In this document: positions 1,130 to 61,394 of the stretch, one piece after another
Numbering within the stretch: position 1 is the stretch's first letter
Layout of the letters: each line of letters opens with the position of its first letter
Assembly: GCF_023055435.1 (NCBI RefSeq)
Contig: NW_025963813.1
Coordinates: 30,070,001-30,134,000 of the forward strand
DNA: 64,000 nt
DNA from: Haliotis rufescens
Lineage: Eukaryota
Reading direction: 5' to 3'
Notes under the pieces: generated by a model
Told to the model about the DNA's origin: nothing
What the model saw: only the letters and a program-made list of their open reading frames with translations
Databases searched by the model: none
Program-made: the position numbers and the translations under genes

Positions 1130-1803
1130 ATCGTCGTCAACACCCCTTTATGGGACTCACTCCACCAACAAAATTCCAATGTGGAGGGACCCTGATGTGA
1201 TTCAAGTCATCAACACCCCTTTATAGGACTCACTCCACCATTGACATTCCATTGTGGAGGGACCGAGGTGATTCAAGTCATCAACACCCCTTTATAGGAC
1301 TCACTCCACCATTGACATTCCATTGTGGAGGGACCGAGGTGATTCAAGTCATCAACACCCCTTTATAGGACTTACTCCACCATTGACATTCCATTGTGGA
1401 GGGACCGAGGTGATTCAAGTCATCAACACCCCTTTATAGGACTCACTCCACCAACAAAATTCCAATGTGGAGGGACCGCGGTGATTCAAGTCATCAACAC
1501 CCCTTTATAGGACTCACTCTACCATTGACATTCCATTGTGGAGGGACCGAGGTGATTCAAGTCATCAACACCCCTTTATAGGACTCACTCCACCAACAAA
1601 ATTCCAATGTGGAGGGACCGAGGTGATTCAAGTCATCAACACCCCTTTATAGGACTCACTCCACCATTGACATTCCATTATGGAGGGACCGAGGTGATTC
1701 AAGTCATCAACATCCCTTTATAGGACTCACTCCACCAACACAATTCCAATGTGGAGGGACCGAGGTGATTCAAGTCATCAACACCCCTTTACAGGACTCA
1801 CTC
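1130..1803. repeat. 71-bp minisatellite, about 9.5 copies
   Basis: TTCAAGTCATCAACACCCCTTTATAGGACTCACTCCACC recurs at 1201, 1272, 1343 etc. (71-bp period). Confidence 0.95.
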
Positions 1804-2834
1804 TGCCTTGGCCCTGAACAAGTTGTAGTGTATGCTTTCGGTCATATGAAAGGCATTTGAAGCGGCCCTACAATATCAATGACAATGCCGTTGCAGAACA
1901 CACCACCTGACACACATTTAAAGGAAGCCATTGATCAATACAAACAGGCTGGAAGACCACAGAAACACTGACTAAAAATAACACGCTTACGGTCGCCGGT
2001 TGTGATGCGTAAACCTCGTTTGGGGATTACTCAGAGCTGGATGAATAATCGATGGATACCTCAATTAACACATAACTGAAAAAAAGAAACATTTTCTTTT
2101 AAGTTTCAAATAAACAACTTGTGACAATTATAGTATTTAGTTCATCGTTTACATATAACTTGTTTCTGAAAATAGGAAAAAAAATAATTTAAGACATGTT
2201 TTGAATATATTTGGTATATTCCTAAATTTCAGGTTTACTATGTACCGAGGCTGCTCATTGTTCTCTCAAAATATGTACTCATCTTTAAATCGGACCGAGC
2301 GTGTTATTGGCATTAGCCAAACAGTTAAACCGGAATAGGCTGAACCCTGTTAATCACTAAAACCACCGACCGATTACTTCTGAGAACGCTTACATGTATA
2401 TCTGTTCACCTTTGTTCTATTCAAGAGTGCGAAATCGTCTCCACTGGAAGCGCTCATAAAATCTCACAACAAAGGACGACGTCGATGCTACTGACAGTGT
2501 CCATTTGTAGTGATTACAAATCTTGTTAACATATTGAGAAAATATGAATGCTTTTCTGAAACAATAACCATAGATGCCATCGCATGTAATTGATATCGAT
2601 CACCGACAAAACAATGTTTATTGTATGATAAATTATCTGCAATCCTTTTTAAGAATGTATTTTATTTAGTGATGTACTGTATGACCCAACTCAACAATAA
2701 ATGGCTGGCAAGCAAAACTGTATTGACAAAATCATAAAGGAATCAACATTAGCAAAAAGAAACCAAAATCCAATAATAGAATTAGTGAATCTAGTTACTT
2801 GCATTCAAATATGCTTTGAGGTTCATGCAGAGGT

Positions 2835-5800
2835 ATCACCATCACCACCATCACCGCCACAACCCATCCATCACCACCATCCCCGCCACAACCTACCATC
2901 ACCACCATCATCGCCACAACCCATCCATCACCACCATCATCGCCACAACCCATCCATCACCACCATCATTGCCACGACCCATCCATCACCACCATCCCCA
3001 CCACAACCCATCCATCACCACCATCATCGCCACAACCTACCATCACCACCATCCCCGCCACGACCCATCCATCACCACCATCATCGCCACAACCCATCCA
3101 TCACCACCATCCCCGCCACAACCCATCCATCACCACCATCATCGCCACAACCCATCCATCACCACCATCATCGCCACAACCCATCCATCACCACCATCAT
3201 CGCCACAACCCATCCATCACCACCATCATTGCCACGACACATCCATCATCACCATCCCCGCCACAACCCATCCATCACCACCATCATTGCCACGACACAT
3301 CCATCATCACCATCCCCGCCACAACCTACCATCACCACCATCCCCGCCACAACCCATCCATCACCACCATCATCGCCACAACCCATCCACCACCACCATC
3401 ACCGCCACAACCCATCCATCACTACCATCACCGCCACAACCTACCATCACCACCATCATCGCCACAACCTATCCATCACCACCATCATCGCCACAACCTA
3501 TCCATCACCACCATCATCGCCACAACCTATCCATCACTACCATCATCGCCACAACCCATCCACCACCACCATCATCGCCACAACCCATCCACCACCACCA
3601 TCACCGCCACAACCCATCCATCACTACCATCACCGCCACAACCTACCATCACCACCATCATCGCCACAACCCATCCATTACCACCATCCCCGCCACAACC
3701 TATCCATCACCACCATCATCGCCACAACCTATCCATCACCACCATCATCGCCACAACCCATCCATCACCACCATCATCGCCACAACCCATCCACCACCAC
3801 CATCACCGCCACAACCCATCCATCACTACCATCACCGCCACAACCTACCATCACCACCATCATCGCCACAACCCATCCATTACCACCATCCCCGCCACAA
3901 CCTATCCATCACCACCATCATCGCCACAACCTATCCATCACCACCATCATCGCCACAACCTATCCATTACCACCATCATCGCCACAACCCATCCATCACC
4001 ACCATCCCCGCCACGACCCATCCATCACCACCATCATCGCCACAACCCATCCATCACCACCATCACCGCAACGATCCACCCACCACCACCATCACCACCA
4101 CAACCCATCCACCACCACTACCATCGCCATAACTCATGCATCACCACCACTGCCACGATCCACCCACCACCACCATCACCGCCACGACGTCCATCACCAC
4201 CACCATCGCCAAAACCCATCCACCACCATTACCACCGACACAACGCGTCCATCATCACCATAACCCCTAGACCCATCCATCATCACCATCACCGCCACGA
4301 CCCATCCATCACCACCATCACCGCCACGACCCATCCATCACCACCATCACTGCCACGACCCATCCATCACCACCATCACTGCCATGACCCATCCATCACC
4401 ACCATCACTGCCACGACCCATCCATCACCACCATCACTGCCATGACCCATCCATCTCCACCATCACAGCCACAACCCATCCATCTCCACCATCACTGCCA
4501 TGACCCATCCATCTCCACCATCACAGCCACGACCCATCCATCTCCACCATCACTGCCACGACCCATCCATCACCACCATCACTGCCACGACCCATCCATC
4601 ACTGCCATGACCCATCCATCACCACCATCACTGCCATGACCCATCCATCTCCACCATCACAGCCACGACCCATCCATCACCACCATCACAGCCACGACCC
4701 ATCCATCTCCACCATCACTGCCACAACCCATCCATCACCACCATCACTGCCACGACCCATCCATCACCACCATCACTGCCATGACCCATCCATCTCCACC
4801 ATCACAGCCACGACCCATCCATCTCCACCATCACTGCCACGACCCATCCATCACCACCATCACTGCCATGACCCATCCATCTCCACCATCACTGCCACAA
4901 CCCATCCATCACCACCATCACTGCCACAACCCATCCATCACCACCATCATCGCCACAACCTACCATCACCACCATCACTGCCACAACCCATCCATCACCA
5001 CCATCACTGCCACAACCCATCCATCACCACCATCACTGCCATGACCCATCCATCTCCACCATCACCGCCACGACCCATCCATCACCACCATCATCGCCAC
5101 AACCCATCCATCACCACCATCATCGCCACAACCCATCCATCACCACCATCATCGCCACAACCCATCCATCACCACCATCACTGCCATGACCCATCCATCT
5201 CCACCATCACCGCCACAACCCATCCATCACCACCATCATCGCCACAACCCATCCATCTCCACCATCACTGCCATGACCCATCCATCACCACCATCACAGC
5301 CACGACCCATCCATCTCCACCATCACTGCCACAACCCATCCATCACCACCATCACTGCCATGACCCATCCATCATCACCATCCCCGCCACAACCCATCCA
5401 TCTCCACCATCACTGCCATGACCCATCCATCACCACCATCACAGCCACGACCCATCCATCTCCACCATCACGGCCACAACCCATCCATCACCACCATCAC
5501 TGCCATGACCCATCCATCATCACCATCACTGCCACGACCCATCCATCACCGCCACACCCCATCCATCACCGCCACACCCCATCCACCGCCACACCCCATC
5601 CACCGCCACACCCCATCCACCACCACACCCCATCCATCACCGCCACACCCCATCCATCACCGCCACACCCCATGCACCGCCACACCCCATCCACCACCAC
5701 ACCCCATCCATCACCGCCACACCCCATCCACCGCCACATCCCATCCATCACCGCCACACCCCTTCCACCGCCAGACCCATCCACCACCACACCCCATCCA

Positions 5801-8092: not shown

Positions 8093-8201
8093 ACGGGGGA
8101 CACCTGAAATGGGTCCCACACATTGTACCCATGTCGGGAATCGAACCCGGGTCTTCGGCGTGACGAGCGAACGCTTTAACCACTAGGCTACCCGAACGCC
8201 C
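8093..8201 (-). mobile_element. tRNA-derived SINE family B, partial
   Basis: Minus strand GGGTAGCCTAGTGGTTAAAGCGTTCGCTCGTCACGCCGAAGACCCGGGTTCGATTCCC (A and B boxes). Confidence 0.85.
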
Positions 8202-25087: not shown

Positions 25088-25330
25088 TCCGTGAAGATCC
25101 GGGTTAGAATTGGTCTTTAGCAATCCATTCTTGCCATAAAAGGCGACTATGCTTGTCGTAAGAGGCGACTAACGGGATCGGGTGGTCAGGCTTGCTGACT
25201 TGGAAGATGTATGTCATCGTATCCCAATTGTCACTGGAGTGTCTGGTCTAGACTCGATTATTTAAAGACCGTCGTCATATAGCTGGAATATTGCTGAGTG
25301 CGGCATAAAACAACAAACAAACATACATAC
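25088..25330 (+). mobile_element. Short retroposon family C (non-tRNA head, (CAAA)n tail)
   Basis: CCGTGAAGATCCGGG(G/T)TAGAAT head and TATAGCTGGAATATTGCTGAGTGCGGC tail. Further copies near 33411, 34200, 37190, 39842, 40163, 53474, 54980, 55866, 60097, and one split by the LTR element (26490-26523 / 32114-32175). Confidence 0.85.
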
Positions 25331-26199
25331 TTTGCTGTACTTTTTAATTTGAAGTTACCAGTATTTATGCAGCAAACATCTAATATAAACTTTTGTTAAG
25401 TGGCATTCTTTGTTGATATTTTAAAGGGTGCATATCAAAGTGAGCTTCAGTGCTGTGCCACTATTTTTCACACTTTTGGGCGGATGATCCATAAACAAGT
25501 AAACAAGTAATTACAACAAGCCTGATGCGTGCTTTGTCTGACTGAGACCCTTGACTATTTCCAGTGCCCTACATGTACGTCCAATGTTGGCTCGCATGAC
25601 AATGATATCTCTGGGACGGTCACGTGCCTTCTACTTCAAGGACAGTTGTCCACTGTAGCATCTTTGCCCGGCGGCGGAAGGCGCCGGTATACTGGTTGTT
25701 CTGAGATTGTGTACTGGGGAATTGTGGGGAGCAGTAGTTTATGTGACAAAAGATTTCCTGGTCAAATTAATGGAAGCGAGGATAAGATATATTATATTAT
25801 TGGTTTTATTGCATGTAATTCATTTACACCTACTTGGGTGTCCCACTTTTTCTGCATTAGATCTCTGATGTAACATCTAATTACAGGTTTATAGTCACTG
25901 TAGGGTATAAGAAGTGGTGTGGGGGTGCCTCGGTAGTATAGAATGTGATTCACCCTCCTAGCTCCCAACCCACCATGGAGTGTCTACGTGGACGTCTGTG
26001 CATCTCCAACAGACTGCACCAAGGATGTCAGGAGGGTATACTCAAGCAGATATATATCTTGAAAAGATGGCACTGGTTTCTGGGCGCACATTTTGTATTT
26101 ATCAAGTAGTGTGAAAATCAATATTCATGTATATTCAAATATTTCTGTCATAAACAGACTTCCAAGCCAAATAGCGAAAAGAGCAAGAAAAGTAAAGTG

Positions 26200-26441
26200 C
26201 TCAGGGCTTGGCATGACCAGCCGATTGATAGAATCGGGCCCATTCTACCACCAAGTTAGGGTCAAAGTGGTGTTTAGGGCTAAGGAACACTATTGCCGGC
26301 CCAGGCGCCCTCAACCACCAGACTACCTTTCTCTGCCGACACAGGGACGCAACCCACGGCAAACAGGCTGTCCAATTTGGTCGCCTTTTACGACCAACAA
26401 TGGGGTGCTGAGGACTCATTCTACCCCGAGTCCACACGGGG
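26200..26441 (-). mobile_element. Element sharing the family C 5' head but with a different body (retroposon 5'-end-like)
   Basis: Minus strand CCCGTGTGGACTCGGGGTAGAATGAGTCCTCAGCACCCCATTGTTGGTCGTAAAAGGCGACC, then unrelated sequence. Confidence 0.6.
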
Positions 26442-26939
26442 GAAGAGTGATTAGCGTTACCCAGCACTCACCACGTGGCTGTAGAAGCATTGTTGTTTGT
26501 TGTTTAACGCAGCACTCAGCAATCGCCAGTTAGGTTAGGAGGAACTGTACACTTGTCACACATCGACAGGACACAGGTAAACACTTGATGATATTTATTG
26601 GCAACACTCGAAACGAACCGCGAACCCAAGCGAGCCTCCCAAGACAGGCGAGCTACCAAGGGGAGCTAACCCTGCTTACATTAAAGCATGCCAAGCAAAC
26701 CTGCGTTGGCGTGACTGTCTTTTTTTTCTTCATAATAAACGTTATCTAAACAAACCATAATGAAGGAAATAGGCGTGAAAAACAACTTGGTAAGTAAACA
26801 ATGATGTAATAAAGATCCAATTTCTGGTTAACCATGAAACCAATTGGTAAGTAAACCATCATAGGGAAGACTGCCCTCTGGTCGATGGGGATTATTCTGC
26901 CCCTCACAAACATAACATTTAATAAACAAACACAATACT

Positions 26940-29900
26940 TCAAAAGTCCAAAACGTATTCATCAAATCGCTTTGGTCGTTGACGTTGACGCGATGGCCTT
27001 GAAGTTGAAGATGACTGTATACCTGGGTCAAATAGGGGGTCAGATTGATCCGACGCAGAACTGATGTCGGTTGGGTGATTGTCATCAAACACGTCATCTT
27101 TAAGCGGTGGCAGAGGAGGAGTAGAAATTTCCAGAGGAATGTGCGGAGTCTCCGGTGTCTGGTGAAGTGTCTCAGGTGGGTCATCATCGATGTCAGATGT
27201 GTCCTCACTGTTCGCTTCATGCACACGTGTCTTGTTCCAAAGGGGGACTTTAAAACATTCTGAGAGCTTAACTCTGTATGAAGTGTTCCGCAGTTGGGTC
27301 CCAACGAACTTGCGGACATTGCACCAGAGGCCATCTTTGGTGACTATTAGGTAACGATTCCGTGCACATGTTTTATTGCGATCGTTATGAAGGTACACCA
27401 GGTCGCCAATCTCAATTTGATCAATAACAGGTCGATGACTCCGAGGAGCCTTGGATTTTTCACTGTGACCGTGGTTTTTTTGGCGATTAACATGTTGCTC
27501 TGTGATCAACTGCTTGTCGGACAGAGGCAACTGACAGTTTGTGAATTGGTCTCTCTGGGTCCACATCTCTCGAGAAGACAGGCCTCGTGAACGAATGCGT
27601 GTGTTTAGGCGGGCGACAGCGATGGCAAGAGCTGTTGGTGTAGTGGGGCCCCGTACAGGGTCTTGGCGCACAAGCTCATCCTCTAATTCTTGTATGGCCT
27701 TTTCAGCAACTGGGTTCTTGTTCACTTTCTTCACTCTGCCTATTTCTAGGGTAATTCTATGTTGCTGGAGACGTTCATCCGTGACTAGACTGCTAAAGCC
27801 TGGAGCTGGGTCAGTGCGGATAACAGCGTGAGGACCATCAAGTGGACGGAATTCAATGCTAAGACGAATCAATGCCTCACACAGGGTGGAGCCACGCTCA
27901 TCGGTAATGATGCACGCCGCAGTGTAGGATGTGACACATTCACGTAGAACGAGGATTAGTTGTCGTTCCCTGCGCATAACATCTGACGCAAATGCAAACC
28001 CAACAGTTTCAGGTGGATCACTGGTGCTTTGGTCCACAACAACATGAGGTGTCTTACGCAAGGAGGCGCACCGGTGACAAGATTTTGAGACAGTGTTTAT
28101 GGATCTGTCAAGGTCCAAAGCAAAGAAGTATCTATGGCATACTTGCTTGAGTTGGTGTGCAGATGGATGATCCAGTTGTATGTGTAGGGCAGTCAGGACT
28201 CCGTCTAATACTTGTCTTGGAACAACAATGCACTCTCTTGGTGAACCGAGTGGTTCAGATTTTCGGACAACAAGCAATCCATCCTTGGAGATGGTTGCTG
28301 CATTTAGGTATCGTTTGACATCCCTGATGTTTGTTATCTTCTTGGATGGTCGGGTACCTTGGAGAAGATGAGCATGTGTTCGTCGAAGATCCTGGCACTC
28401 CTCTTGCAAGGAACGCCAAGCAGACCTGCTTGTGAAAGGAAGGCGGGTTGTTCCATTCATGATGTCCTCTATAGACAGTTGTCGAACAACAGAGCTTTCT
28501 GTGCGCTCAATGAAGGAGCAGATTTGGCAAGAGGGATTGTCACATTCTGGTGCATTTCTGCTTGCAAAATCGGATGGCACATTTGCAGAACCAGCGAGAT
28601 GTTGTATCGTTGCTTGGTAGCGGCTAACTGTCGATAAGAAGGTAGACACCCGAGGACTAGCAGAGAACTCCCCACGGCATAACTTCTCAAATGCCAAAAC
28701 ACATGGTCTACTGTCGGTAAGGATACATGCTTTGTGTTTTGACTGGATAATGAAAGGACTGAAATGCTTTGTAGCGATAGCAATTGAAAGGGCTTCCACT
28801 TCACATGGTAACCATGCGACCTGTTGTCGCCGAAGCTTGGCACTGAAGAATCCTGCTAGTCGTGGCGAGTCACTACGTGTTACATAAAGTGTTGTTCCAA
28901 TTCCTGGTTTCCTAACAGCACCATCAGTTACAATCCAGAGTTGGTCATCAGGGTGGGGCAGTACTATGGATTTGTTGGATGCGAGACCAGTCTGTGCTGT
29001 TTTGAAGGCATCGAGCAAAGAATCAGACCACAGAAGCTTTTTTCACTGGACTGGCGACCGCCCACTTCAGCATCAAGTGGGGCAAGGAGTGTGGAACAAC
29101 CAGGTATTACATGGGACAAGACCTTGTAAGCTCCAATAAATGACCGTAAGCCAGTCACTGTTTCCGGAGGTGAACAAGAAGCCAGAGTTGATATGCGGTG
29201 TTGACTTGCCTGAATGGATCCTTGGTGCCATTGCCATCCTAGGATGGTTGTTGTCCTGGGAGCAATGACTGTCTTGTTAGGAGATAATCTGAGATTGTTG
29301 TGTTTGAGCGCTTCAAGTACGCGTCTCCAATGAAGAAGTAACTCATCCGGGCTATCAGCACCACAATAAAGGTCGTCAGCAAGCTTAGCAATCACCCCTT
29401 CCTCTAAAAGATCCCCTAGTACGCGGCGCATGAGCTCCTCCAATGCAGTTTCAGAGCCCGGCATTCCGATTGCAGACCTGGCATATACTCTCACACCACG
29501 GAACGGGGTCACTACACCGCAGTATTTCATCGATTCCTTGGACAGAGGAATCTGATAAAAGGCATTGGTTAAATCTGTGGTTATAATGTACTTCCACTTG
29601 GCAATCTGTCTTAGAGTAGAATCGACATCAGGCATGAGGGAAGGTTGTGGCTTACTGTATCGTCCTACATCAGAGAAGGCGGTCACCAATCTGTAACCAC
29701 CAATGGACTTCTTGATTAGGAAAGAAGGGTTGAGGTATTCTACTTGGATACCAGCATCTTCAGGTCGTACAAATACACCCATCCGCTCAAGTTCATTGAA
29801 CTTTTGTTGGAGCTTAGAAAGTTTATCTCGTGAGTATTGCGGGACACGACCCTTCCGTTGTGGAGGTTGTACAGGTCCCATGTTAACAAATGCTTGAAAG

Positions 29901-31786
29901 GGGCCTGAAGCACCATTATAGCCATCGATATGTTGGTTAAACACATCGTCGAACTCCGTAAGTAGTAACTCAAACTGAGATTTGGTATCTTGCGGGAGGA
30001 TATTGTCTGGGTCTACACAAACAGTGGATGAGAAACCAATGTCCTTAATTTGAGGGGACATAGTTGGTGGTAGCAGATGTGCGGGCTCAACATCATAACC
30101 AGGGTCGCAGTCAGGTATAAAAACTGGGCGAATCTGGCAAAAGTGCTCGTGTTTCTTGAGCAGTTGTGGAGTGTCGTACAGATTCGGGATCCTGATTTTG
30201 CCTGAGACACTTGAGATAATTCCTAATTCTGGCCAAGTGGATGATAAGGTAGAGCGTCCAGGTCTGGTATCTATGCGGGGTTCTATGGCAAATGTGAAAT
30301 CCGAAGGAGCAAAGCTTTCAGGAACCGGCACCTCAATAAAGTCTCCAGGCCATATGGTAGTAGAAGTGTCTGGGGCTCTGAGTACGCAAGCTCGTCTCAC
30401 AGTATGTTTGTCACCAGTTGTTTCTGTGGAACCGTATGTGTATGTCGTACCATCACCAAGTATGATCCGATGTTTTCCAGGGCGTACTGCCACATCGTTG
30501 GCCTCCATAAATGGTATGCCTGCAAGGACTTCTACATCCAGGTTTTCCACCACAAGACCACTAAAATCGAACTCCTTGTTGTCGCGTGTGAAAAGGATTC
30601 TTGTCTCTCCAACGACCTTCAGTGGGGAAGAACCATCTGCCTGATGGGCTGACTGAGAGCTAGTCTTGATGTCAGCGCCGAAGCCTGTTGCTGTTGAGAG
30701 GCGGATCATATTACCAGTAGCTCCACTATCTACAGTGACTAGTGCCGTCTGGTGGCCACAAAAACAGTACATATAGGGCGACTGACGGACTTGCACACGA
30801 AGAGTTGAGACAGGTTCAGTAGATGGCACTGCACACGCATTTTCAACTGTATCACTAGCATCGTCAGCAGGGTCATCAAGTATACTGGCAATTTGTCTTG
30901 CCATGTATCTCCGGTCATGATCTGGAAGGAACTTGCACTCGCTGAGATAATGAACATGATCGCTGCGTCCTGCAGCTTTACACAGTGGGCATGATTTTGG
31001 AAACTTTCTACCCGTTTGTTGTGCTTTAGCAAAACGTGAGAATGACAAGCGCTGTTGTGAAGTGTTTGTCCTCATAACCTTAGCATCCTCTGCTGTGCGG
31101 ATTTCATCTAAAAGTGAATCGAGAGCCTGTTAGATTTCAGGTTTCAAAGAGGAAATTGTTTGTGAGCGAAGATCTGTCCCATAACGTTGTTTGACGAGCT
31201 TTGGAAGTTCAACGTGTATTAGCCTCAGCCATGTAAGCACAACAAAATTTTCTAACGATGGTGACAATTCCTCGTCCTCTTCAGGTGCATTGCCATAGTG
31301 GGTTATTCCCCCTTCACGGCGGAGTAAATTGTCCTCCACAAAAGCCATTAGTCTCTGATACAAATCTTCCGGTCTCTCGTCATTTTCAAGTTTGATTTCG
31401 GCAAAGTCAATGAAATGAGCGCCAGTTGCTTGGAACCCGAAATGTAGGCGTATGGCATCTACAGACGTTGAGGATTTTATTATGGTGTTCCGTGAAATTA
31501 TCGGACAATAATTGGCAATCTAGCCGAGCATAAGCTCCAAACTGCTAACCTTTTGTCTTGCAGTTCTCCTAACAGCTTCACGGACGTCTTCCCCGTCGTC
31601 AGTCATGCCCCTGAGTGGCGTGGCCCTAGTTTTCTTATGCCAGACTGCCCCGTCGGCAAGAAATGGAGTAAAATTTGTGTCCAAAGATAATGTATAAAGG
31701 AGATTTTGCCTCCAGTTCTCGAAAGAATTTACAGTCTCAATCTTACCGAGGCACCATTGCTTCGGGGCACGTTGAGCGTTGGCCAT
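26940..31786 (-). pseudogene. gag-pol polyprotein with stops at 31520-31522 and 31130-31132 and a frameshift near 29030
   Basis: Gag Zn knuckle CPLC...H...C; protease VDSGA; RT TDLTNAFYQIP and LADD; RNase H VTDGA, EVEAL, LTDS; integrase HHCC and D...D(35)E (SDV, RTDP, VAEK). Confidence 0.92.
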
Positions 31787-31913
31787 AATGACAGTCTTGT
31801 TTACTCTGCGTTATCCAGGCACTCTACCGCCTGACCTGTTGATCACGTTCAGTGAAAGTATGCAAGTACTACAGTTCGTTGTGCCGCCTGCTTCGTTAGA
31901 CGTGAGTTCAAAC

Positions 31914-31925
31914 CCGCTGCCACCA
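31914..31925 (-). promoter_or_regulatory. Primer-binding site complementary to a tRNA-Leu 3' end
   Basis: TGGTGGCAGCGG is the reverse complement of ...CCGCTGCCA-CCA, the 3' end of metazoan tRNA-Leu(AAG/TAG). Confidence 0.75.
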
Positions 31926-34840
31926 CGCCAGTTAGGTTAGGAGGAACTGTACACTTGTCACACATCGACAGGACACAGGTAAACACTTGATGATATTTAT
32001 TGGCAACACTCGAAACGAACCGCGAACCCAAGCGAGCCTCCCAAGACAGGCGAGCTACCAAGGGGAGCTAACCCTGCTTACATTAAAGCATGCCAAGCAA
32101 ACCTGCGTTGGCGAATATTACAATTTTATGACAGTCTGTAAATCAAGTCTGGACCAGAAAATCCAGTGATTAATAATACTGTAATCATCATCCTTTCCCA
32201 AAGAACACACGCAAGTCGTTGCCACAATCAACACACGTCTTTATTTCATTACTGAACAAATCCAACTGTCCTAATGGTCTGACTGCCCCCTACTTTATTC
32301 TATTCTTACCGTGTACCCGCTTACCAAGCAACCATCCCCTTCGTCCGCCATATTCGTTCTGCCTCCGTTTAGAGTTATCCCCCTTATACAGCCAAGCTCC
32401 TCACAGCAATATCCCGTTCGCGGAGCTCTCTATTTACTATCGCTGACACCAGTCAAACTCCCCACGGTGATAGATGACCAAAACCATGCTTGGAGTTGAA
32501 CTCGCAGCCGATTGACCGTTATGTTTACAAACAAGTGACGACTGTCGTGACGCCGAATACACTTACCGCTGATAAATTACTTTCTTTGTTTGTCAATTTG
32601 AATTTCTATTTCATTAAAATTATCATGTAATTGATAAAGTAAGAATGTAAGGGAGAAGTTGGTTGATTTTCCGTTAGTCTGCAATCTCGAACCAATCTGA
32701 TTATACAAACAACAAAGTAAATTCATCTGGAAAACATGGTCAGTCGTAAACCTTTTCAAAATCAAATATGATGGTATTCCGAAAGATATAAACAAAAGTA
32801 TAAACGTTACTACATTTGGGGTTAGAGGGCAAATTTCAAGATTCTTGTAATGGCCGCGCCCACTCTGGTGGCAGCGATGTTACCGAGAGTGTAACGAAGG
32901 TGTCACGCACTGGGAAGGAGCTTGTGACAGTGCATATAGGGTAACACAAGTTGCCTCCCCTTATACAATACTTCAACGCTCCACGTCGTCGGGACATGCA
33001 ATCGATTACGCCTACTCTTCCGACCAGCTAGGGACGTATTCTAACCACAGGGTTTATAGAAATAACGGTATATCCGTTAAAACAATCAAAAAAAGCGGAG
33101 TGATCAAGACGAATCAGGCAAAGTGGTTGTTTGAAGGCTGTCAAGGTCAGAGATGACACATAGCAAGTCACACATGTAACTAACCAATACTCAAGCCACA
33201 AAGTATTTTTGCTAAGCGTATTATCCATATGCAATAACATTGCAAAGAAGCTTACCCCCGCGAGGATTTCGGTTATTGGTCCATAGCAACCCATGACGGT
33301 CGGTATAGGCGACTCAATGGGTCGTACATGATAGGTACAATGCGGTTCTCTCTTTATATGGGGACGTAACCCCCTTTTGGTACGCGGGATTCGCGAGTTT
33401 GTTGGCATGGTATGGTTTCTTGCTTAACGCCAAACTCATCAATATTCCAGCTATATGACGGCGGTCTGTAAATAATCGAGTCTGGGGACCAGACAATCCA
33501 GTGATGAATATCATGAGCATCGATCGATGGGATCGATGACATGCATCAACCAAGTCAGCGAGCCTGACCACCCGATCTCATCAGTCGGATCTTACGACAA
33601 GCATAGTCGCCTTTTCCGCCAAGTTGTTGTTGAAAATAAAATGCAACAAACGGTAACCTGCTTGCTTATGTTCAAGAAACATTCATCAATGACATCCTTC
33701 TTATGATTTTGTGAGAGTTAAACAGTGACAGTTTCTTTATGTATGAGAAACCCTCATCAATGGCCTATATGCCACGTACATGTAGGTTACAAGCAAAACA
33801 AGCAAGAGTGAGCCAGTGAGTTAAAATGTAACATCAAATCTGCATAATAATTTTACAATTTCAACCCTACCAGGGGCACAGTCACTAAAAATCACAGTTA
33901 ACAATCATTTACTACCGATTTATGAAATAACTAACTTTGTATGTCATTTTTTTAAAATTCTATTTCTTTTAATAAGCACAATATTAAATGAAAATTATCA
34001 TTAATAATGAAGTCTTTGACATTTTTTCACTGAAATATTTATCCCTTGTGATGGCAAAATCAATACAGTCAGGCAGGACATGCTTGATCCTCTCCTTTTA
34101 AATGGATATTTCTGTGAATATCTGCTGTGGCCTTTACGGGGGCGGTCGGATAGCCTAGTGGTTAAAGCGTTCGCTCGTCACGACGAAGACCCGGGTTTGA
34201 GCCTGACCACCCGATCCCGTTAGTCGCCTTTTACGACAAGCATAGTCACCTTTTACAGCAAGCATGGGTTGCTGAAGACCTATTCTATCCCGGAATCTTC
34301 ACGGGTTGGGGTTTGTTTGGAGGGTATTCGGGACTCAGTAGTGTGGTACACGGGATGGCTATAAAGACATATTTGGTACGCAGATTCAACATTTAAAAAG
34401 AATATTGGTGTGCGTAAAAAAATCCTTCATATATTTTTTCGACATTATTTTGAGTAATTTAACTTCAGATCGCACCCTTTTAGGGCCAAGGAACGTGTTC
34501 TGTAGGTTTTTGTCTGTGATTGACATTCTGCCTTCATCGAGTGAATTCTATGAATTAGTTTTGATATTTGTGTCAAGTAGTATTCGGGATTCAGGGGTGA
34601 GCACATGAGACTCGGGATTCAGGTGAGGTGGTTGTGGCACTCCCTTAGAGTGGCTATCGGGTAGCCTAGTGGTTAAAGCGTTCGCTCGGGTTTCGATGCC
34701 CGACATGGGTACAATTGTGTGAAGCCCATTTCTAGTGTTCCCCGCCGTGATATTGCTTGAATATTGCGAAAAGCGGCGTAAAACCATACTCACTCACTCA
34801 CTTAAATTGCAGAGAAATACTTTTGTGACCATCTTTCTAA

Positions 34841-40035: not shown

Positions 40036-41770
40036 ATGGGTGTAAGTCTAGAAGTTAAGAGACAGCGAATTGAGACTTTTCTCCTAAGCCACCTGGCAAG
40101 ATCAACGAAACGCCATGTTGACAGCAGCTACTTTATGTGGCGATGTTGAATTAAACCCTGGCCCCCGTGAAGATCCGGGGTAGAATAGGTCTTCAGCAAC
40201 CCATGCCTGTCGTAAAAGGCGACTATACCTGTCTTAAAAGGCGACTAACGGGATCGGGTGGTCAGGCTCGCTGACTTGGTTGATGCATGTCATCGATCCC
40301 AATTGCGTGGATCGATGCTCATGATATTAATCACTGGATTGTCTGGTCCAGACACGATTATTTACAGACCGCCGTCATATAGCTGGAATATTGCTGAGTG
40401 TGGCGTTAAACAACAAACCCAGGAATGATAGTGATGCATCCCCAAAAGATACGAAGAACTGATTTCTGTCATAAACTCGTCGGGTATGATGGAGCTGAAA
40501 GCAGAGACGAGTAAACTGAAGATGAAGGTCAGTAAAACACAAACACAGGTGTTAGCGCAGCTGCTGAGCCAATGACGAAAACAGTAAAGGTCAAATGTAA
40601 TGACTCTAAAATGTGGCTTGGCAAGGAATGCAATTTCTATAGATGTGAATGTCCTCGACTCCTCCTGGTTTAAAGATAGCGTAAAGATTGCGAGTCCCTC
40701 AGACGTTACATAAGAGCAAGAAAGTACACTATTGCATTACGGGAGAAGAAAAGACGGCATAATGATTCTATTCGTGATACACTAACAGCCAACATAAATA
40801 ATGCAAAAGAGTTTTGGGAGGGGTACGACATATGACTGAAATTAACCAACACAATCCGAATATAATTACTGATGATGGTAATGTTGATGCTATTGTTATT
40901 GATAACACTGATGTCCATGTTGATGATGCAGCTGTCAGTATTTAGATGTACCAATTACAAAAGCTGAAATATATCAATGTATAATGGAGTTAAAATCATC
41001 CAAATCTGCTGGGTCGGATGATATTATTGCCGAATTCTTTAATGGTGGCAACGACTTGTTATTACAGAACCCTGAACTCATTTTTAATATATTGTTTGAT
41101 TCAGCGCACTTTCCACAATCCTGGAGCACAGGCATATTTATACCAATTATCAACACCAAGTCATATGGTATATATTTTGGCTATATTTGGGAACATCAAT
41201 CTGTCGGTAACGTTCTTACATTTATTTCAGAATTTACATTTCGGTTAAAGTCATCCTACGAACAAAACTGGCATGATGCCCCCCCCAAAAAAAACCTGTT
41301 AAAAACCGCATAGTTATTCTTTGTTTGGTCTGGAAATGTATCTATGTAATCAGTGTCTCTAAGTTTAGAAAATGTCTTACAAACCAGAGATGTCGTTCCC
41401 ATCAGTGAGAATTGAAACCGGACGACACTGCCAACAACCAAGATGTGAGAGAGTATGTTTACTGTGTAACAAATTGTATATAGAAGATGATTACCATTTC
41501 ATCCTTGTTTGTGATATATATCAATCCTCCAGGAACTGTTATATACCAGCCAAATTCTGTGTCAATTATTCTATAAATGAATTTAATACGCTCATGTCCA
41601 GTAAAAATGAAGGATTTTAAAGAATCGTGCAATGTATGTATATAAATCTACAGAACTAAGAAGATCTCTGCTAGACCAAAATAACACTGTCTCTCTGTTG
41701 GATAAGTGATATGTTCAATCTTTATTTCACATACTGAAGAGGCCACAGGCCTATAGTACAATTTGAAGAA
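40036..41770 (+). mobile_element. Heavily deleted non-LTR retrotransposon (RTE-X-like) with N-terminal 2A motif, interrupted by a family C copy
   Basis: MGVSLEVKRQRIETF...CGDVELNPGP; pre-RT LKSSKSAGSDDIIAEFF...FPQSWSTGIFIPI; C-terminal IETGR...ERVCLLC...EDDYHFILVC. Clade assignment tentative. Confidence 0.7.
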
Positions 41771-53473: not shown

Positions 53474-53755
53474 GACCCTGTGAAGATCCGGGGTAGAATA
53501 GGTCTTCAGCAACCCATGCTTGCCGTAAAAGGCGACTATACTTGTCGTAAAAGGCGACTGTGCTTGTCGTAACAGGCGACTAACGGCACGGGTGGTCAGG
53601 CTCGCTGACTTGGTTGATGCATGTCATCGATCCCAATTGCGTGGATCGATGCTCATGATGTCAGTCACTGGATCCAGACTCGATTATTTACAGGCCGTCG
53701 TCATATAGCTGGAATATTGCTGTGTGCGACGTAAAACAACAAACAAACAAAACAA
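53474..53755 (+). mobile_element. Family C retroposon with three copies of the GTCGTAARAGGCGAC hairpin module
   Basis: Matches other family C copies; one extra module. Confidence 0.88.
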
Positions 53756-56241
53756 GCCTAACAAGGTCATGTCTTGATTTTGTTGCTTCGACCGTTGAAC
53801 TGCGCACTTTGCTTAAAAAACTTATTGTGAATTGTTGGTGCTCCGGATCTGATAACCCAGTAAATAGTCTATATATGTTCCCGTGATCGTAAATATCATG
53901 AACTGTTTATTTGTTCCCCTATAAAAAATAATTAACCGGTTTCGGTGTAGCCGCGTTTATGAGTATAGTGATTCGAATGAGGGCAGCTATGGGTATAACT
54001 GTAATTCTATTAACGACAACCCAGCTACAAAGAGCTCAAACAACATGAATATTTTGTGTAGTTAATCGCATCTTTCCGGAATGACACGAATGGTCACGAA
54101 TGTCTTCTTTCTTTCCCCTATGAATTTGTCTCTCAATAGAGTGAGTGAGTGAGTATGGTCTTACGCCGCCTTTAGCAATATTCCAGCGATATCACGGCGG
54201 GGGACACCAGAAATGGGCTTCACACATTGTACCCATATGGGGAATCGAACCCGGGTCTTCGGCGTGACGAGTGAACGCTATAACCACAAGGCTACCCCAC
54301 CGCCCCGCCAGGAATGTTGTTAAACGCGGCGTAAATCCATACTCGCTTACTCTCTCATTTCTACTGGACACAATTGCCGGGGCTTCCGAAATTCTGAAAG
54401 AATATTTAAGACACCATTATGGAACAACAAAAGACTAACAGTTAGTGAATGGAAGAAAATATAGTTAACTTTTAATTTGCTAAATTGTCTTGTGATATAT
54501 AATAGAAAGGAGAGCAGAAAATGTCATCATTTTAGATAATAGAGAAGCCAACCTATTAAAACTATTATGGGATTGCTTGGGATATTTTTCCTTCAGAGTC
54601 TCAACTGTCTCGTAGATAGAAGACACTATATGCAACATTGCTAAGTCTGACAAACTGTGACATGACACCACTGAGTACACAGGGCCGTAAGATATATCTA
54701 CACCCTGTCATGAACTTAACTGGTGTATTTATTTGTAAGGGCCAGATCACGACTATCATATCTCTAAGTAAGCGAGTATATGCTGGTGGGAAATAATAAC
54801 GGAACACTTTGCAACAAAGAGGAACATGGTTTATTGCTGTGTTCAATTTGTACAACGTGACAGTGAAACCTCGATAATCCAAACGGTTTTTCCCCCCTAA
54901 AAAAAATCCGGATTAGCAAAGAATGGACATGATAAATGAACTTTTAGGACGGATGAAAATGTGATTATTTTAGGTTTGGTTTGGTTTGTTGTTTTACGCC
55001 GCTCTCAACAATATTCAAGCTATGTGACGGCGGTCTGTAAATAATCGAGTCTGGACCAGACAATCCAGTGATTGACATCATGAACATCGATCCACGCGAT
55101 TGGAATCGATGGCATGCATCAACCAAGTCAGCAAGCCTGACCACCCGATCCCGTTAGTCGCCTTTAACGACAAGCATGGTCGCCTTTTACGGCAAGCATG
55201 GGTTGCTGAAAACTTTAAGTTAAATACTTAAAATATTAAAATATTGTTTTGACTATCATCAGACATTTTCAAATAGCTGACAACTAGCCTTTTTGTCTCT
55301 ACCACTAATCTGACATGATTGCATACGTACATAGCGCTAAAAGGTGTAAAGAACGCCGATCAAGAGAAGGCCTTACAATGAACCCACAAATCTGTACTGT
55401 TTTCATCTACATCTCCTTAGAAAATCAGCTGGTGTCAAAGACTTTTCAAATATCAGAAAACACGCTTCCCCGAAAGCTCTAAAATTAATTTTATTGTTGT
55501 TATAACTTCAAAACATGCAAGTGTCAAAATGAACAGTGATAAATCCATTCATACCAACATATTGGATGACTTTAATAACTATTTCTTAACGTTTTGAATG
55601 TTTGTCAAATCATGCATATCCTGTATCTAAGTGTTTATGTTGTAGCAAATGTTATGTAGACAGCACAAATATATTGGAATGAAAAGCAATTTGGCACATT
55701 TTTGAACCATGTAAAAACTCCGTTTCAGGTTCCACTTGAAGTAGACTCTACCTTGAACCCCTCTTAACACTGCGTTCAACGTTGAACTTCGTCCTCTTTC
55801 CATGTAATGTCGTTCATCACTCCATGTAATCTCGCTTAACGAGTCATGATCTCTCCATGTAATCTGACCCGTGGAGATCCGGGGTAGAATAGGTCTTCAG
55901 CAACCCATGCTTGCCGTAAAAGGCGACTATGCTTGTCGTAAGAGGCGAGTAACTGGATCGGGTGGTAAGACTCGCTGACTTGATTGATGCATGTCATCGT
56001 ATCCCAATTGCATAGATCGATGATAGTCCAGACTCCATTATTTACAGACCGCCGTCATATAGCTGGAATATTGCTCAGTCCGGGGTTAAACAACAAACAA
56101 ACCAAACCCTGTAATGTTGTTCAACGTTCAACTAAATGTGGTCATAAAACTATATGCACAAGGTAAGTTTCGATTCGCTTATTTACTGCATGTATTGCTT
56201 CACAGCTGTGATGTCATTTAGTCATTTTGTCATCGGTATAT

Positions 56242-56410
56242 GGGGCGGTCGGGTAGCCTAGTGGTTAAAGCGTTCGCTCGTCACGCCGAAGACCCGGGTT
56301 CGAATCCCGACATGGGTACAATGTGTGAAGCCCATTTCTGGTGTCCCCCGTCATGATATTGCTGGAATATTGCTAGAAGCGGCGTAAAACCAACTCACTC
56401 ACGCACTCAC
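56242..56410 (+). mobile_element. SINE family B, full length, TSD TCATCGGTATAT
   Basis: A/B boxes, (CTCA)n tail, direct repeat at 56230-56241 and 56411-56422. Other copies near 34655, 36781, 47525, 47720, 54139, 61203, 63705. Confidence 0.92.
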
Positions 56411-59933: not shown

Positions 59934-61394
59934 GTGATAAGGTTTGGTACATGGTTCCTTCTTTCTGAATATACAAACAGAACCATCATCCTTGAACCAT
60001 TTACTGTAGTTCCTGGTATGTCTTCTTTCCAAGGACCCATCCTACAAAACAAGAGCCACGGCTATCGTAGCTCCCATACCTTAACATAGGCTTGCTTTTG
60101 TTTGTTTGTTGTTTAACGCTGCACTCAGCAATATTCCAGCTGTATGACGGATGTCTGTAAAAAAATCGAGTCTGAACCAGACAATCCAGTGGTTGATATC
60201 ATGAGCATCGATCCACGCAATTTCAATTCGATGACATGCATCAACCAAGTCAGCGAGCCTGCTCATGATAGCAATCACTGGATTTTCTGGTGCAGACTCA
60301 GTTATTTACAGGCCGGCGTCACAAAGTTGACATACTGCTGAATGTTGCGTTACGCAACAACCAAATAATCCGTGAGGTACTCCCTTAATGAGGTTGGTTT
60401 TAGATGTGAAAATTGATTGGACTGCAATTTTTATCGTCTTCATTCGAATCTGGCACACAACGAAGCGGTGGTGAATGGGAACAGAGCATTTATCCTGATC
60501 GATTGGAGATACTACCCTGGATAATCTCGGATGACACAGCCAGGGAACAGTATGTTTACACTCCCCCTTCTATATGTTTACAACGGTGTATATGGTCGGG
60601 CTGCATAATTCTCAATCGTCGCCATTGTTGGTTTGACCGTGACACAGTTTCCTGTTCTTCAGTGGCATAAGACACAATTGACTGAGTTTACCGTTACATA
60701 GCGCGACAGGTGCGCGAACCGACATGTTTTGAGGTACAGGGGCGTGAGAAGCCGACTACAGCAGTTCAAGGTACTGCAGTTCATTCGGGAAAATACAGGT
60801 ACGTTTATCCGACAATCTTTTTACAAAATGTAACATACATTCAGCAAGCTAGGCGAGTTTTATGAAATAGGAATTTTCCAATATTTGTAATGAAAGTATG
60901 AATTTGAGACATACGCAAGTGTTCTCTTTTGGCGTTTAAATTTCTGCATTTGATCTACAATTCATTATGTGTTCATTTGAAAGGGGTATCAACTACATGC
61001 TTAAGCCCAGTGTTGGGCGTGTAAGATCGACTACAGCAGGTGAAAATAAGGCAGTTTTACGAAATATTAAATCTTAATTGCTGATAATTTTGTCTTTCGT
61101 TATGTGTAAGAGTGTATGCACGTCGACATGTGTACCTGTGTCACACAGATGCCACATATTCCCGCGATATTTACGTCATGCTTGAAACACATGCTTCAGA
61201 TGGAGTGAGTGAGTGAGTGAGTATGGTTTTACGCCGCTTTTAGCAATATTCCAGCAATATCACGGCGGGGGACACCAGAAATGGGCTTCACACATTGTAC
61301 CCATGTCGGGAATCGAACCCGGGTCTTCGGCGTGACGAGCGAACGCTTTAACCACTAGGCTACCCGACCGCCCCTGCTTCAGATTGAAGGTACA

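What the first reader, a model, noticed from the sequence alone, without database searches (positions are those of the whole stretch)
26370..26441. Non-tRNA retroposon head folds into a covarying stem plus pseudoknot and hairpin: candidate structured RNA or ribozyme
Seen: family C (about 11 copies) has no recognisable Pol III A/B boxes and starts CCCGTG-AAGATCC-GGGGTAGAAT-AGGTCTT-CAGCAACCC. The element here starts CCCGTG-TGGACTC-GGGGTAGAAT-GAGTCCT-CAGCACCCC and then has a different body. The stem differences are compensatory (A-U to G-C, C-G to U-A, U-G to C-G), while the loop GGGGTAGAAT is unchanged and can pair with the downstream ACCC(C) as a pseudoknot. A GTCG-TAARAGG-CGAC hairpin follows, and in family C the 5' CCCGT can pair with ACGGG after CTAA. 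Knowledge: several non-LTR clades (R2, RTE, Ingi) use 5' HDV-like ribozymes, but this topology does not fit the HDV, hammerhead, twister or pistol folds as I know them. Inference: a conserved functional RNA module (5'-end processing, promoter or RT-loading signal) shared by different retroposons. Covariation rests on only two sequence types.
Basis: partly seen in the sequence, partly recalled or inferred. Interest (0 to 1): 0.78.

Follow-up and report, generated by a model that had tools for sequence, protein, structure and literature searches.

The report
Folded LINE leader that heads SINEs
The flagged 72 bases are a conserved folded RNA piece from the leader of an abalone LINE retrotransposon, lying just behind a small HDV-like self-cutting RNA, and the same piece alone forms the head of a very abundant SINE of a kind first reported in molluscs in 2016.

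Summary
The motif is real (window 26441..26370, minus strand), but the element does not start there. It is nt 59-130 of the 5' UTR of an APE-RT-RNase H LINE of Haliotis rufescens. Intact copies begin 58 nt upstream with a minimal HDV-like ribozyme. The window copy is cut off inside that ribozyme and is internally deleted.

The stem is a true conserved helix. In 17 sequences (7 abalone, 10 metagenome LINE lineages; unfitted alignment), 90% of cells pair, against 29-49% in slid controls, and 20 of 25 pairs change on both sides.

That C-run is the loop of a small covarying hairpin (AGC/GCU) and pairs with a G-run behind the GUCG hairpin, giving a different pseudoknot.

"Family C" (at least 14,670 copies) starts with this module and lacks the ribozyme. 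It fits the LP-SINEs (LINE-derived heads) of Matetovici et al. 2016.

The module shows no ribozyme features. I read it as an RNA-level cis signal of the LINE that the SINE borrows, possibly also a promoter. This function is inferred, not shown.

Two earlier findings of this scan on other DNA of this genome (s1-811101, s1-811094) reached the same reading.

The parts
26199..26478 (-). 5' UTR fragment of an APE-RT-RNase H LINE (LINE nt 22-311). The copy is 5'-truncated.
   Evidence: BLAST of the full LINE L060:85-6283 against the window gives 82.1% over 290 nt. Upstream sequence departs from the 27 other LINE-type copies aligned.
26442..26478 (-). Remnant of the HDV-like ribozyme (LINE nt 22-58): 3' part of L3, P3 3' strand, P1 3' strand, GG of P1.1, J4/2 and P2 3' strand. 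The P1, P2 and P3 5' strands are missing, so it cannot fold.
   Evidence: Homology to L060 85-142, where the three best Rfam matches are all HDV-type. Window sequence.
26436..26441 (-). C-run plus GU linker (LINE nt 59-64), conserved in front of helix H1.
   Evidence: Pairing with the loop G-run is inconclusive.
26410..26435 (-). Helix H1 with the conserved purine-rich loop GGGGUAGAAU (loop 26418-26427).
   Evidence: 6 of 7 pairs change on both sides on the unfitted alignment A2 and 7 of 7 on the model-fitted A3. RNAalifold predicts it independently. It is in the MFE fold of the window copy.
26396..26409 (-). Small hairpin H2a (AGC/GUU here, AGC/GCU in intact copies) whose loop ACCCCAUU holds the C-run.
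   Evidence: RNAalifold on A2. 3 of 3 pairs change on both sides, 98% of cells paired.
26379..26395 (-). Hairpin H2 (GGUCG-UAAAAGG-CGACC).
   Evidence: 3 of 5 pairs change on both sides, 94% of cells paired. Present in MFE folds.
26372..26375 (-). 3' strand of the pseudoknot helix, which pairs with the C-run in the H2a loop. It is weakened in this copy (UUGG against RUGGG in intact copies).
   Evidence: 4 of 4 pairs change on both sides, 75.8% paired on A2 and 83.6% on A3.
26349..26371 (-). Helix H3 (RCAGCC-UGUUUGCCGUG-GGUUGC), the most conserved block of the LINE 5' UTR across lineages.
25800..25920 (-). Piece of the same LINE family's ORF2 3' end (LINE nt 5229-5349). The copy is internally deleted.
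   Evidence: blastn 90.9% over 121 nt and tblastn to ORF2 residues 1091-1134.
40161..40415 (+). Full family C SINE copy whose head is the module without ribozyme. Further copies with heads lie at 25089-25315 (+), 34199-34305 (-), 53476-53741 (+) and 55868-56095 (+).
   Evidence: The head aligns to LINE nt 57-120.

Best explanation
The flagged stretch is nt 59-130 of the 5' UTR of a dead copy of a Haliotis rufescens LINE (ORF1 with three CCHC knuckles; ORF2 with APE, RT and RNase H). The copy is 5'-truncated and internally deleted.

In intact copies, nt 1-58 form a minimal HDV-like self-cleaving ribozyme whose cleavage site coincides with the element's first base. The flagged module follows directly. 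The module is a conserved RNA fold with these parts:
- helix H1, capped by a purine-rich loop (G-run plus UAGAAU);
- a small hairpin H2a, whose C-rich loop pairs with a G-run lying 3' of hairpin H2 (loop UAARAGG), which makes an H-type pseudoknot;
- in LINEs only, helix H3.

An abundant SINE (family C, an LP-SINE) starts exactly with H1 + H2a + H2 and has no ribozyme.

Inferred mechanism: the module works as RNA. It is a 5' cis signal bound by the LINE's own proteins. ORF1p's zinc knuckles on the exposed G/A-rich loops are the most concrete candidate. The signal would serve RNP assembly or 5'-end handling during retrotransposition, and the SINE copies it, together with a LINE-like 3' tail, to be mobilised in trans.

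The same DNA may also carry the internal promoter proposed in 2016. The identity and the fold are shown. The binding partner and the role are inferred.
For: Identity:
- L060 is a 6.2-kb element with a 12-bp TSD, ORF1 and ORF2. ORF2 carries Exo_endo_phos, RVT_1 and RNase_H.
- Window 26478..26199 equals LINE nt 22-311.
- Species: ORF1 is 100% identical to a Haliotis rufescens protein on a contig whose length equals that of C1.

Ribozyme:
- The three best Rfam matches at L060 85-143 are all HDV-type and begin at or within 2 nt of the element's first base (RF02682, 27.5 bits, E 0.0022).
- P1 is 7 of 7 with a G1.U pair, and P2 is 7 of 7.
- P1 and P2 differ yet stay complementary in L126, L168 and L169.
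- The first 35 nt occur 993 times.

Fold:
- On the unfitted alignment A2, 90.4% of 416 cells pair, against 29-49% when partners are slid. 20 of 25 pairs change on both sides, against 3-5 when slid. 0 of 500 shuffles reach the observed values.
- On the model-fitted A3, 22 of 23 pairs change on both sides.
- RNAalifold finds H1, H2a, H2 and H3 on its own.
- G.U pairs outnumber A.C 65 to 22, so the sense strand is the one that folds.

Constraint:
- The first ~190 nt are almost invariant in LINE lineages whose ORF1 is only 59-67% identical.
- The module recurs upstream of ORF1 homologues of 33-64% identity in metagenome contigs.

SINE:
- 14,670 heads.
- TSD and start at GACCCGTG.
- The head matches LINE nt 57-120.

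ORF1 knuckles: invariant C/H columns in A1.
Against: - No test of binding, cleavage or transcription was possible.
- Single-sequence folding energies are not better than shuffles (z from +0.11 to -1.92).
- The conserved loops and flanks could equally be DNA-level promoter motifs.
- Rfam scores for the ribozyme are below the gathering thresholds (27.5 against 44), because P4 is almost absent.
- Nine metagenome loci gave no Rfam match at E <= 0.05.
- The similarity of the SINE tail to the LINE 3' end (score 46) lies within the range of shuffles (maximum 49), so the partner LINE is not proven.
- A3 was fitted to the model and leans towards it.
- No long-RNA raw reads were available, so RNA 5' ends are unseen.
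Confidence: 0.5

Rival explanations
1. The module is chiefly an internal promoter acting at the DNA level (the 'LINE promoter' idea behind the name LP-SINE). It directs transcription to start at or just upstream of itself. This is why it heads the SINE and some LINE lineages.
For: - It sits at the exact 5' end of at least 14,670 SINE copies, where SINE promoters lie.
- Two copies of one metagenome LINE lineage (L113/L114) and the abalone copy L055 diverge right upstream of the C-run.
- The promoter role was proposed by Matetovici et al. 2016 (PMC4758252, section 10 read).
- Loops and flanks are sequence-conserved.
Against: - A DNA promoter does not need base pairing, yet 20 of 25 pairs covary and G.U pairs exceed A.C 65 to 22.
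- In abalone LINEs the RNA must start at least 58 nt upstream of the module to include the ribozyme.
- The authors themselves say the role is untested.
Confidence: 0.3
2. The module is itself a self-cleaving ribozyme of a new or degenerate kind. It would define the 5' end of the SINE and of LINEs that lack the HDV-like fold.
For: - Discrete 5' ends lie exactly at the module.
- The order C-run, H1 5' strand, G-run, H1 3' strand has the same interleaved topology as P1/P2 of HDV-like ribozymes (my reading).
- A conserved AGAAU precedes the H1 3' strand.
Against: - There is no P3/L3 equivalent and no conserved C. That position is U or C in abalone and U in others.
- HDV models match only the upstream 58 nt and nothing in the SINE head.
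- The C-run:G-run pairing is inconclusive (25 of 500 shuffles reach it).
Confidence: 0.05
3. The module is a translation or stability element for the uncapped, ribozyme-processed LINE RNA (IRES-like, or a block to 5' exonucleases). The SINE carries it only as a relic.
For: - It lies directly behind a 5' ribozyme and about 440 nt (LINE nt 59 to about 498) upstream of the ORF1 start.
- From memory, not read here: HDV-like ribozymes of LINEs were reported to aid translation initiation (Ruminski et al. 2011).
Against: - A non-coding SINE keeps H1, H2a and H2 at its very head in at least 14,670 copies and even duplicates the H2 unit.
- A pure translation role does not explain that.
Confidence: 0.1
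4. There is no function. The similarity is common descent of young repeats, and the pairing is chance.
For: - Folding energies are not significant.
Against: - Covariation is seen across lineages with 33-64% ORF1 identity.
- 0 of 500 shuffles reach the observed values, and the slid controls are far lower.
Confidence: 0.05

Closest known systems
[quoted passage not shown] 2016, Genome Biol Evol, PMC4758252; sections 9-10 and figure legends read)
   Same: - Short TSD-flanked retroposons with 3' tandem repeats.
- Their first ~70 bp are homologous to the 5' part of a LINE 5' UTR (Nimb-17_LMi, I-3_DR, RTE-9_CPB).
- Reported in Haliotis diversicolor and H. midae.
- The head is proposed as a promoter.
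- Family C here has a 63-nt head matching the abalone LINE 5' UTR.
   Different: - The paper describes sequence homology only. It gives no RNA fold for the head and no link to a ribozyme.
- I could not see its figure 3 or its supplements, so identity of its head with this module is inferred from length, host genus and abundance.
- In the abalone LINE the module is not terminal but follows a 58-nt ribozyme.
HDV-like ribozymes at LINE 5' ends (L1Tc L1TcRz/Pr77: PMC3185411 and PMC3383444, abstracts seen in a search listing; R2: PMC3774820, abstract seen; RTE recalled from memory)
   Same: - The 58 nt upstream of the module show P1 with G1.U, P2, P3, an L3 of UCCUCGU type, P1.1 and J4/2.
- The cleavage site lies at the element's first base.
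- As with Pr77, non-autonomous relatives share 5' sequence with the LINE.
   Different: - The flagged module is not this ribozyme.
- The SINE shares the piece behind the ribozyme, not the ribozyme itself.
- P4 is almost absent, and Rfam scores stay below the gathering thresholds.
Conserved 5' RNA pseudoknot of R2 that binds R2 protein (Christensen 2006; Kierzek 2008-2009; recalled from memory, not read here)
   Same: A covarying pseudoknotted RNA in the 5' region of a LINE transcript, thought to act through the element's own protein.
   Different: - A different LINE clade, with no sequence or fold similarity shown.
- The R2 motif is not known as a SINE head.
- Binding is untested here.
UnaL2/UnaSINE1 shared 3' stem-loop (PMC1636434, abstract seen in a search listing)
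   Same: A LINE and its partner SINE share a conserved RNA hairpin used as a recognition signal.
   Different: That signal is at the 3' end and is recognised by the RT for priming. This one is at the 5' end.

Membership tests
HDV-like ribozyme (asked of the flagged module itself) | Nested double pseudoknot with P1, P1.1, P2, P3/L3 and P4 | tested here: not met
   Rfam HDV-type models match only L060 83-143, upstream of the module. They match nothing in the window copy or the SINE head. No P3/L3 equivalent lies between the H1 5' strand and the G-run.
HDV-like ribozyme (asked of the flagged module itself) | Conserved catalytic C in J4/2 | tested here: not met
   The position before AGAAU is U or C in abalone (14,670 against 598 copies) and U in other lineages.
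HDV-like ribozyme (asked of LINE nt 1-58, of which the window keeps nt 22-58) | P1 of about 7 bp starting at the cleavage site with G1.U; P2; 3-bp P3 with a 7-nt L3; GG for P1.1; C in J4/2 | tested here: met
   P1 is GGCACUC/GAGUGCU, 7 of 7. P2 is GAAGAGC/GCUCUUC, 7 of 7. L3 is UCCUCGU and GGG follows. P1 and P2 covary in L126, L168 and L169.
HDV-like ribozyme (asked of LINE nt 1-58) | Score at or above Rfam's gathering threshold | tested here: not met
   27.5 bits against 44 (RF02682), 21.7 against 50 (RF00094) and 16.5 against 37 (RF01787). P4 is reduced to about 2 nt.
HDV-like ribozyme (asked of LINE nt 1-58) | Self-cleavage 5' of G1 | not testable with these tools
   Indirect only: the TSD abuts G1 in L060, and most of the 28 copies aligned start at the same base.
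LP-SINE (Matetovici 2016) | Short non-autonomous element with variable TSDs and 3' tandem repeats | tested here: met
   L059 has the 12-bp TSD CTATATGTATCG, about 255 bp and a (CAAC)n-type tail. There are 14,670 heads.
LP-SINE (Matetovici 2016) | Head homologous to the 5' part of a LINE 5' UTR, not to tRNA, 5S or 7SL | tested here: met
   The head aligns to LINE nt 57-120 at 79-81% identity. There is no tRNA or other Rfam match.
LP-SINE (Matetovici 2016) | Head homologous to the first ~68 bp of Nimb-17_LMi, I-3_DR or RTE-9_CPB | not testable with these tools
   Those Repbase sequences, the paper's figure 3 and its supplements were not available.
tRNA-derived SINE | tRNA-like head with A and B boxes | tested here: not met
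   The Rfam tRNA model hits only 8126-8197, 56247-56318 and 61298-61369. ARAGORN finds none. An E-value search of the SINE head finds no tRNA.

The most novel reading that the evidence does not exclude
The module, together with helix H3 behind it, is an undescribed, widely distributed structured RNA family absent from Rfam. It would be a pseudoknotted 5' recognition domain of I/Nimb-like LINEs, bound by the LINE's own proteins. LP-SINEs would then be the first SINEs that mimic their LINE at the 5' end as well as the 3' end. In lineages without the HDV-like ribozyme, it would also define the RNA 5' end.
Probability: 0.3. Interest if true: 0.7.

Novelty: new member of a known kind. Interest (0 to 1): 0.5.

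Why it matters
How LP-SINEs work has been open since 2016. They are the only SINEs whose head comes from a LINE rather than from a small RNA gene.

This work shows that the head is a covarying RNA fold with a pseudoknot, conserved across distant LINE lineages. It also shows that in the abalone LINE the head sits directly behind a minimal HDV-like ribozyme.

That turns the vague 'promoter?' idea into testable alternatives: an RNA signal against a DNA promoter, separable with compensatory stem mutants. It also supplies a seed alignment for a new RNA family model.

Tried and rejected
- **Rfam on the module.** Gathering thresholds on the whole window gave only three tRNA-like SINE heads. E-value searches on the window copy and on a SINE copy gave only noise.
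- **tRNA origin of the head.** I noticed a likeness of GAUCCGGGGUAGAAU to tRNA D-arm or B-box regions. I dropped it because no model supports it and because the LINE, presumably a Pol II transcript (my assumption), carries the same piece.
- **An HDV-like fold built on the module itself**, with P1 GUGCUG/CAGCAC. Dropped once full-length copies showed the true P1 (GGCACUC/GAGUGCU) and P2 upstream.
No covariation.
By homology the GGG pairs with the H2a loop. The divergent copy at 33257-33330 keeps ACCCAU/AUGGGU but has no ACGGG. Not formally tested.
- **Folding-energy z-scores.** Not significant.
- **Rfam on nine metagenome LINE loci.** No match at E <= 0.05.
- **SINE tail against LINE 3' end.** The best local alignment lands at the LINE's last 75 nt, but its score (46) is within the shuffles (maximum 49).
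- **RNA 5' ends.** Only small-RNA raw reads and unstranded contigs were on offer, so there is no evidence on transcript starts.
- **Literature.** No paper in the library holds both 'Nimb' and 'HDV-like', or 'LP SINEs' and 'HDV-like'. The 2016 paper's secondary-structure text concerns another domain. Its figure 3 and supplements, which I could not see, may show the head sequence.

Full report
**What is at the coordinates.**
- On the minus strand, 26440..26402 reads CCCGTG-TGGACTC-GGGGTAGAAT-GAGTCCT-CAGCACCCC, followed by GGTCG-TAAAAGG-CGACC.
- The exact loop decamer occurs 5 times in the window: here and in four family C copies.
- BLAST of one family C copy finds 13 pieces in the window, five of them with an intact head.

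**Scale and organism.**
- The frame CCCGTG-N7-GGGGTAGAAT-N7-CAGC has 14,670 exact matches in the 1.33-Gb genome and none for the reversed control.
- 682 of these have a stem that does not begin with AA.
- 598 further copies carry the loop variant GGGGCAGAAT.
- The genome is Haliotis rufescens. The ORF1 of the element below is 100% identical to a protein named from that species, on a contig of 94,228,061 bases, the length of C1.

**The element in the window is a LINE, and the module is not its head.**
- I aligned the flanks of 28 copies with LINE-type stems. Most share a further 58 nt upstream of the module and start at the same base, GGCACTCGTG....
- One such copy (L060) is a 6.2-kb element flanked by the 12-bp duplication CTATTTTATTCA.
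- It has a 487-aa ORF1 and a 1,228-aa ORF2.
- ORF2 carries Exo_endo_phos, RVT_1 (1.5e-36) and RNase_H (3.2e-11). ORF1 has no Pfam match but has three CCHC-type knuckles (invariant C/H columns in alignment A1).
- I call it I/Nimb-like from this architecture. The clade was not tested.
- The family looks young and diverse. Many ORF1 copies have open frames, and lineages differ by up to about 40% in ORF1.

**An HDV-like ribozyme occupies LINE nt 1-58.**
- In an E-value Rfam search of L060 60-330, the only three matches were HDV-type models lying within L060 83-143, at the element's 5' end (nt 1 = position 85).
- They were RF02682 (27.5 bits, E 0.0022), RF00094 (21.7 bits) and RF01787 (16.5 bits). 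All are below the gathering thresholds because P4 is almost missing.
- The fold has:
  - P1 GGCACUC/GAGUGCU, 7 of 7, with a G1.U pair at the cleavage site;
  - P2 GAAGAGC/GCUCUUC, 7 of 7;
  - a 3-bp P3 with L3 UCCUCGU;
  - GG for P1.1;
  - a C followed by UAAUA before the P2 3' strand.
- In relatives from metagenome contigs, P1 and P2 have other sequences but stay complementary (L126, L168, L169).
- The first 35 nt occur 993 times in the genome, against 1 + 1 for the control.
- Against this, nine metagenome loci searched whole gave no Rfam match at E <= 0.05.

**Anatomy of the window copy.**
- LINE nt 22-311 align to 26478..26199 (82.1%), and LINE nt 5229-5349 align to 25920..25800.
- The copy therefore starts inside L3 of the ribozyme, lacks the 5' strands of P1, P2 and P3, and is internally deleted.
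- LINE nt n corresponds to window base 26500 - n over the module.
- Its H1 variant (TGGACTC...GAGTCCT) is unique in the genome.
- The other two (A-U to G-C, U.G to C-G) separate real multi-copy lineages.

**Relatives elsewhere.**
I therefore used an ORF1 alignment to fetch 80 metagenome contig pieces encoding ORF1 relatives of 33-64% identity.
- 42 of the 80 hold the block CTGTTTGCCGTGGGT with at most 3 mismatches upstream of ORF1. A few of these (for example L103, L172) look like chance.
- About a dozen lineages carry the whole module: C-run, H1 with a loop of the type GGG(U)UAGAAU, CAGC...GCUG, GUCGUAARAGGCGAC, G-run and H3.
- Others (L126, L138, L163, L171, L140, L144, L156) have a longer HDV-like ribozyme followed by different hairpins and the same H3 block.

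**The fold.**
- I aligned 17 sequences with MAFFT (alignment A2): 7 abalone sequences including the window, and 10 metagenome lineages.
- Left out of A2 were:
  - near-duplicates L108 and L114;
  - L094, which is cut at its 5' end;
  - L116, L125 and L139, which carry inserts;
  - all SINE copies.
- RNAalifold on A2 predicted H1, H2 and H3. It also predicted a small helix I had not proposed, AGC/GCU, enclosing the C-run.
- I then counted my full model, with the C-run:G-run helix written as a pseudoknot, on this unfitted alignment:

| Measure | Observed | Controls |
|---|---|---|
| Cells paired (of 416) | 90.4% | 29-49% when partners are slid |
| Pairs changed on both sides (of 25) | 20 | 3-5 when slid |
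| Covariation score | 0.442 | 0.05-0.105 when slid |
| Shuffles reaching the observed values | 0 of 500 | |

- Per helix, on A2:

| Helix | Pairs changed on both sides | Cells paired |
|---|---|---|
| H1 | 6 of 7 | 86% |
| H2a | 3 of 3 | 98% |
| Pseudoknot helix | 4 of 4 | 76% |
| H2 | 3 of 5 | 94% |
| H3 | 4 of 6 | 98% |

- A covariance model built from A2 (R1) found 64 matches in 91 sources. On that fitted alignment (A3), 22 of 23 pairs change on both sides and 88.1% of 1,121 cells pair.
- G.U plus U.G cells number 65 against 22 A.C plus C.A, so the sense strand is the folding strand.
- Single-sequence energies are not better than shuffles, with z from +0.11 to -1.92 over six sequences.

- Loop GGGG with ACCC(C): 81.7% of cells pair and 0 of 4 pairs change on both sides. 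All 500 shuffles are at least as high, and a slide of -1 does as well. This gives no support.
- Pairing of the 5' C-run with the loop G-run: 88.3% paired, with one double change in each of 2 pairs. 25 of 500 shuffles reach it. This is inconclusive.

**Family C.**
- It starts GACCCGTG next to a 12-bp TSD and ends in a (CAAC)n-type tail (L059).
- Its first 63 nt align to LINE nt 57-120.
- It has no ribozyme and no H3.
- The H2 unit is present 0 to 3 times. Among 27 copies, 4 have none, 8 have one, 14 have two and 1 has three.
- Matetovici et al. 2016 (PMC4758252; sections 9-10 and legends read) described 'LP-SINEs'. Their first ~70 bp derive from the 5' part of LINE 5' UTRs (Nimb-17_LMi, I-3_DR, RTE-9_CPB).
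- They reported LP-SINEs in Haliotis diversicolor and H. midae, and proposed an untested promoter role.
- They give no fold for this head.
- Family C fits that class. Identity of their head with this module is my inference, because their figure 3 and supplements were not available.

**Mechanism.**
- Shown: position, fold, covariation and sharing between LINE and SINE.
- Inferred:
  - The module acts as RNA, because pairing is preserved through sequence change and through G.U pairs.
  - Its role is not translation alone, because a non-coding SINE keeps it at its head.
  - The LINE's proteins are the likely partners. ORF1p has three CCHC knuckles, and the two conserved loops are exposed and G/A-rich.
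- A promoter role of the same DNA is not excluded and may coexist.
- The module shows no ribozyme features.

**Reads.**
- On L059, which holds a LINE 5' end and a SINE head back to back, one small-RNA run (X20) gave 127 of 128 reads starting at + 1500. These are 31 nt long, begin with U, and are antisense exactly over H1 of the LINE.
- In the same run, 63 of 74 reads start at - 1812, antisense to the SINE body.
- The sister run X19 laid only 7 reads.
- No long-RNA raw reads existed, so 5' ends of transcripts remain unseen.

**Verdict.**
- The thing is a new member of a known kind: the LP-SINE head and LINE 5' UTR module, next to an HDV-like LINE ribozyme.
- The new information is the covarying fold.
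- Two earlier findings of this scan on other pieces of this genome (s1-811101, s1-811094) came to the same reading. I reached it from my own calls before looking them up.

Noticed in passing
L059:1500-1530 (+), antisense to LINE nt 64-94: A 31-nt small RNA beginning with U lies antisense exactly over helix H1 of the LINE. 127 of 128 reads in small-RNA run X20 start at the same base, and the sister run X19 has almost none. A second pile (63 of 74 reads) lies antisense to the SINE body at 1812..1782. These are piRNA-like, but they may be copies of a few molecules.
   Followed up: partly
L003-L005 (G000:C1 about 867,000), L030 (C1 about 4,063,400), C1 about 9,113,300: Tandem arrays made of the SINE head alone (H1 plus linker), with periods of about 44, 48 and 87 bp. 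This is a satellite derived from the module.
   Followed up: no
L060-L092 (abalone LINE 5' ends): The first ~190 nt of the 5' UTR are almost identical in LINE lineages whose ORF1 proteins are only 59-67% identical. This points to very strong constraint or to repeated 5' UTR exchange between lineages.
   Followed up: partly
window 33257-33330 (+): A divergent module-like head (C-run, weak H1, AGCAACCCAU, GUCG-GUAUAGG-CGAC, AUGGGU) is followed by a different body. This is possibly an older family with the same kind of head.
   Followed up: no
window 26490-26520 and 32114-32175 (-): A family C SINE copy appears split by the LTR element that another note places at 26521-32116. Its tail lies 11 nt upstream of the truncated LINE copy.
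   Followed up: partly
L126, L138, L163, L171, L140, L144, L156 (metagenome contigs): Related LINEs carry a longer HDV-like ribozyme with a long P4, and some with a large insert between P1 and P2. Different hairpins follow, and then the same UGUUUGCCGUG helix H3.
   Followed up: partly
L113/L114 (metagenome) and L055 (abalone): These copies begin directly at the C-run of the module, with unrelated sequence upstream. Some lineages or copies therefore lack the ribozyme, as the SINE does.
   Followed up: no
window 8126-8197 (-), 56247-56318 (+), 61298-61369 (-): Weak tRNA matches (30-34 bits). The one read (56247-56318) looks like the head of a separate tRNA-derived SINE family, and a further copy of it lies inverted inside the family C copy near 34160-34200. 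The matches at 8126 and 61298 were not examined.
   Followed up: no
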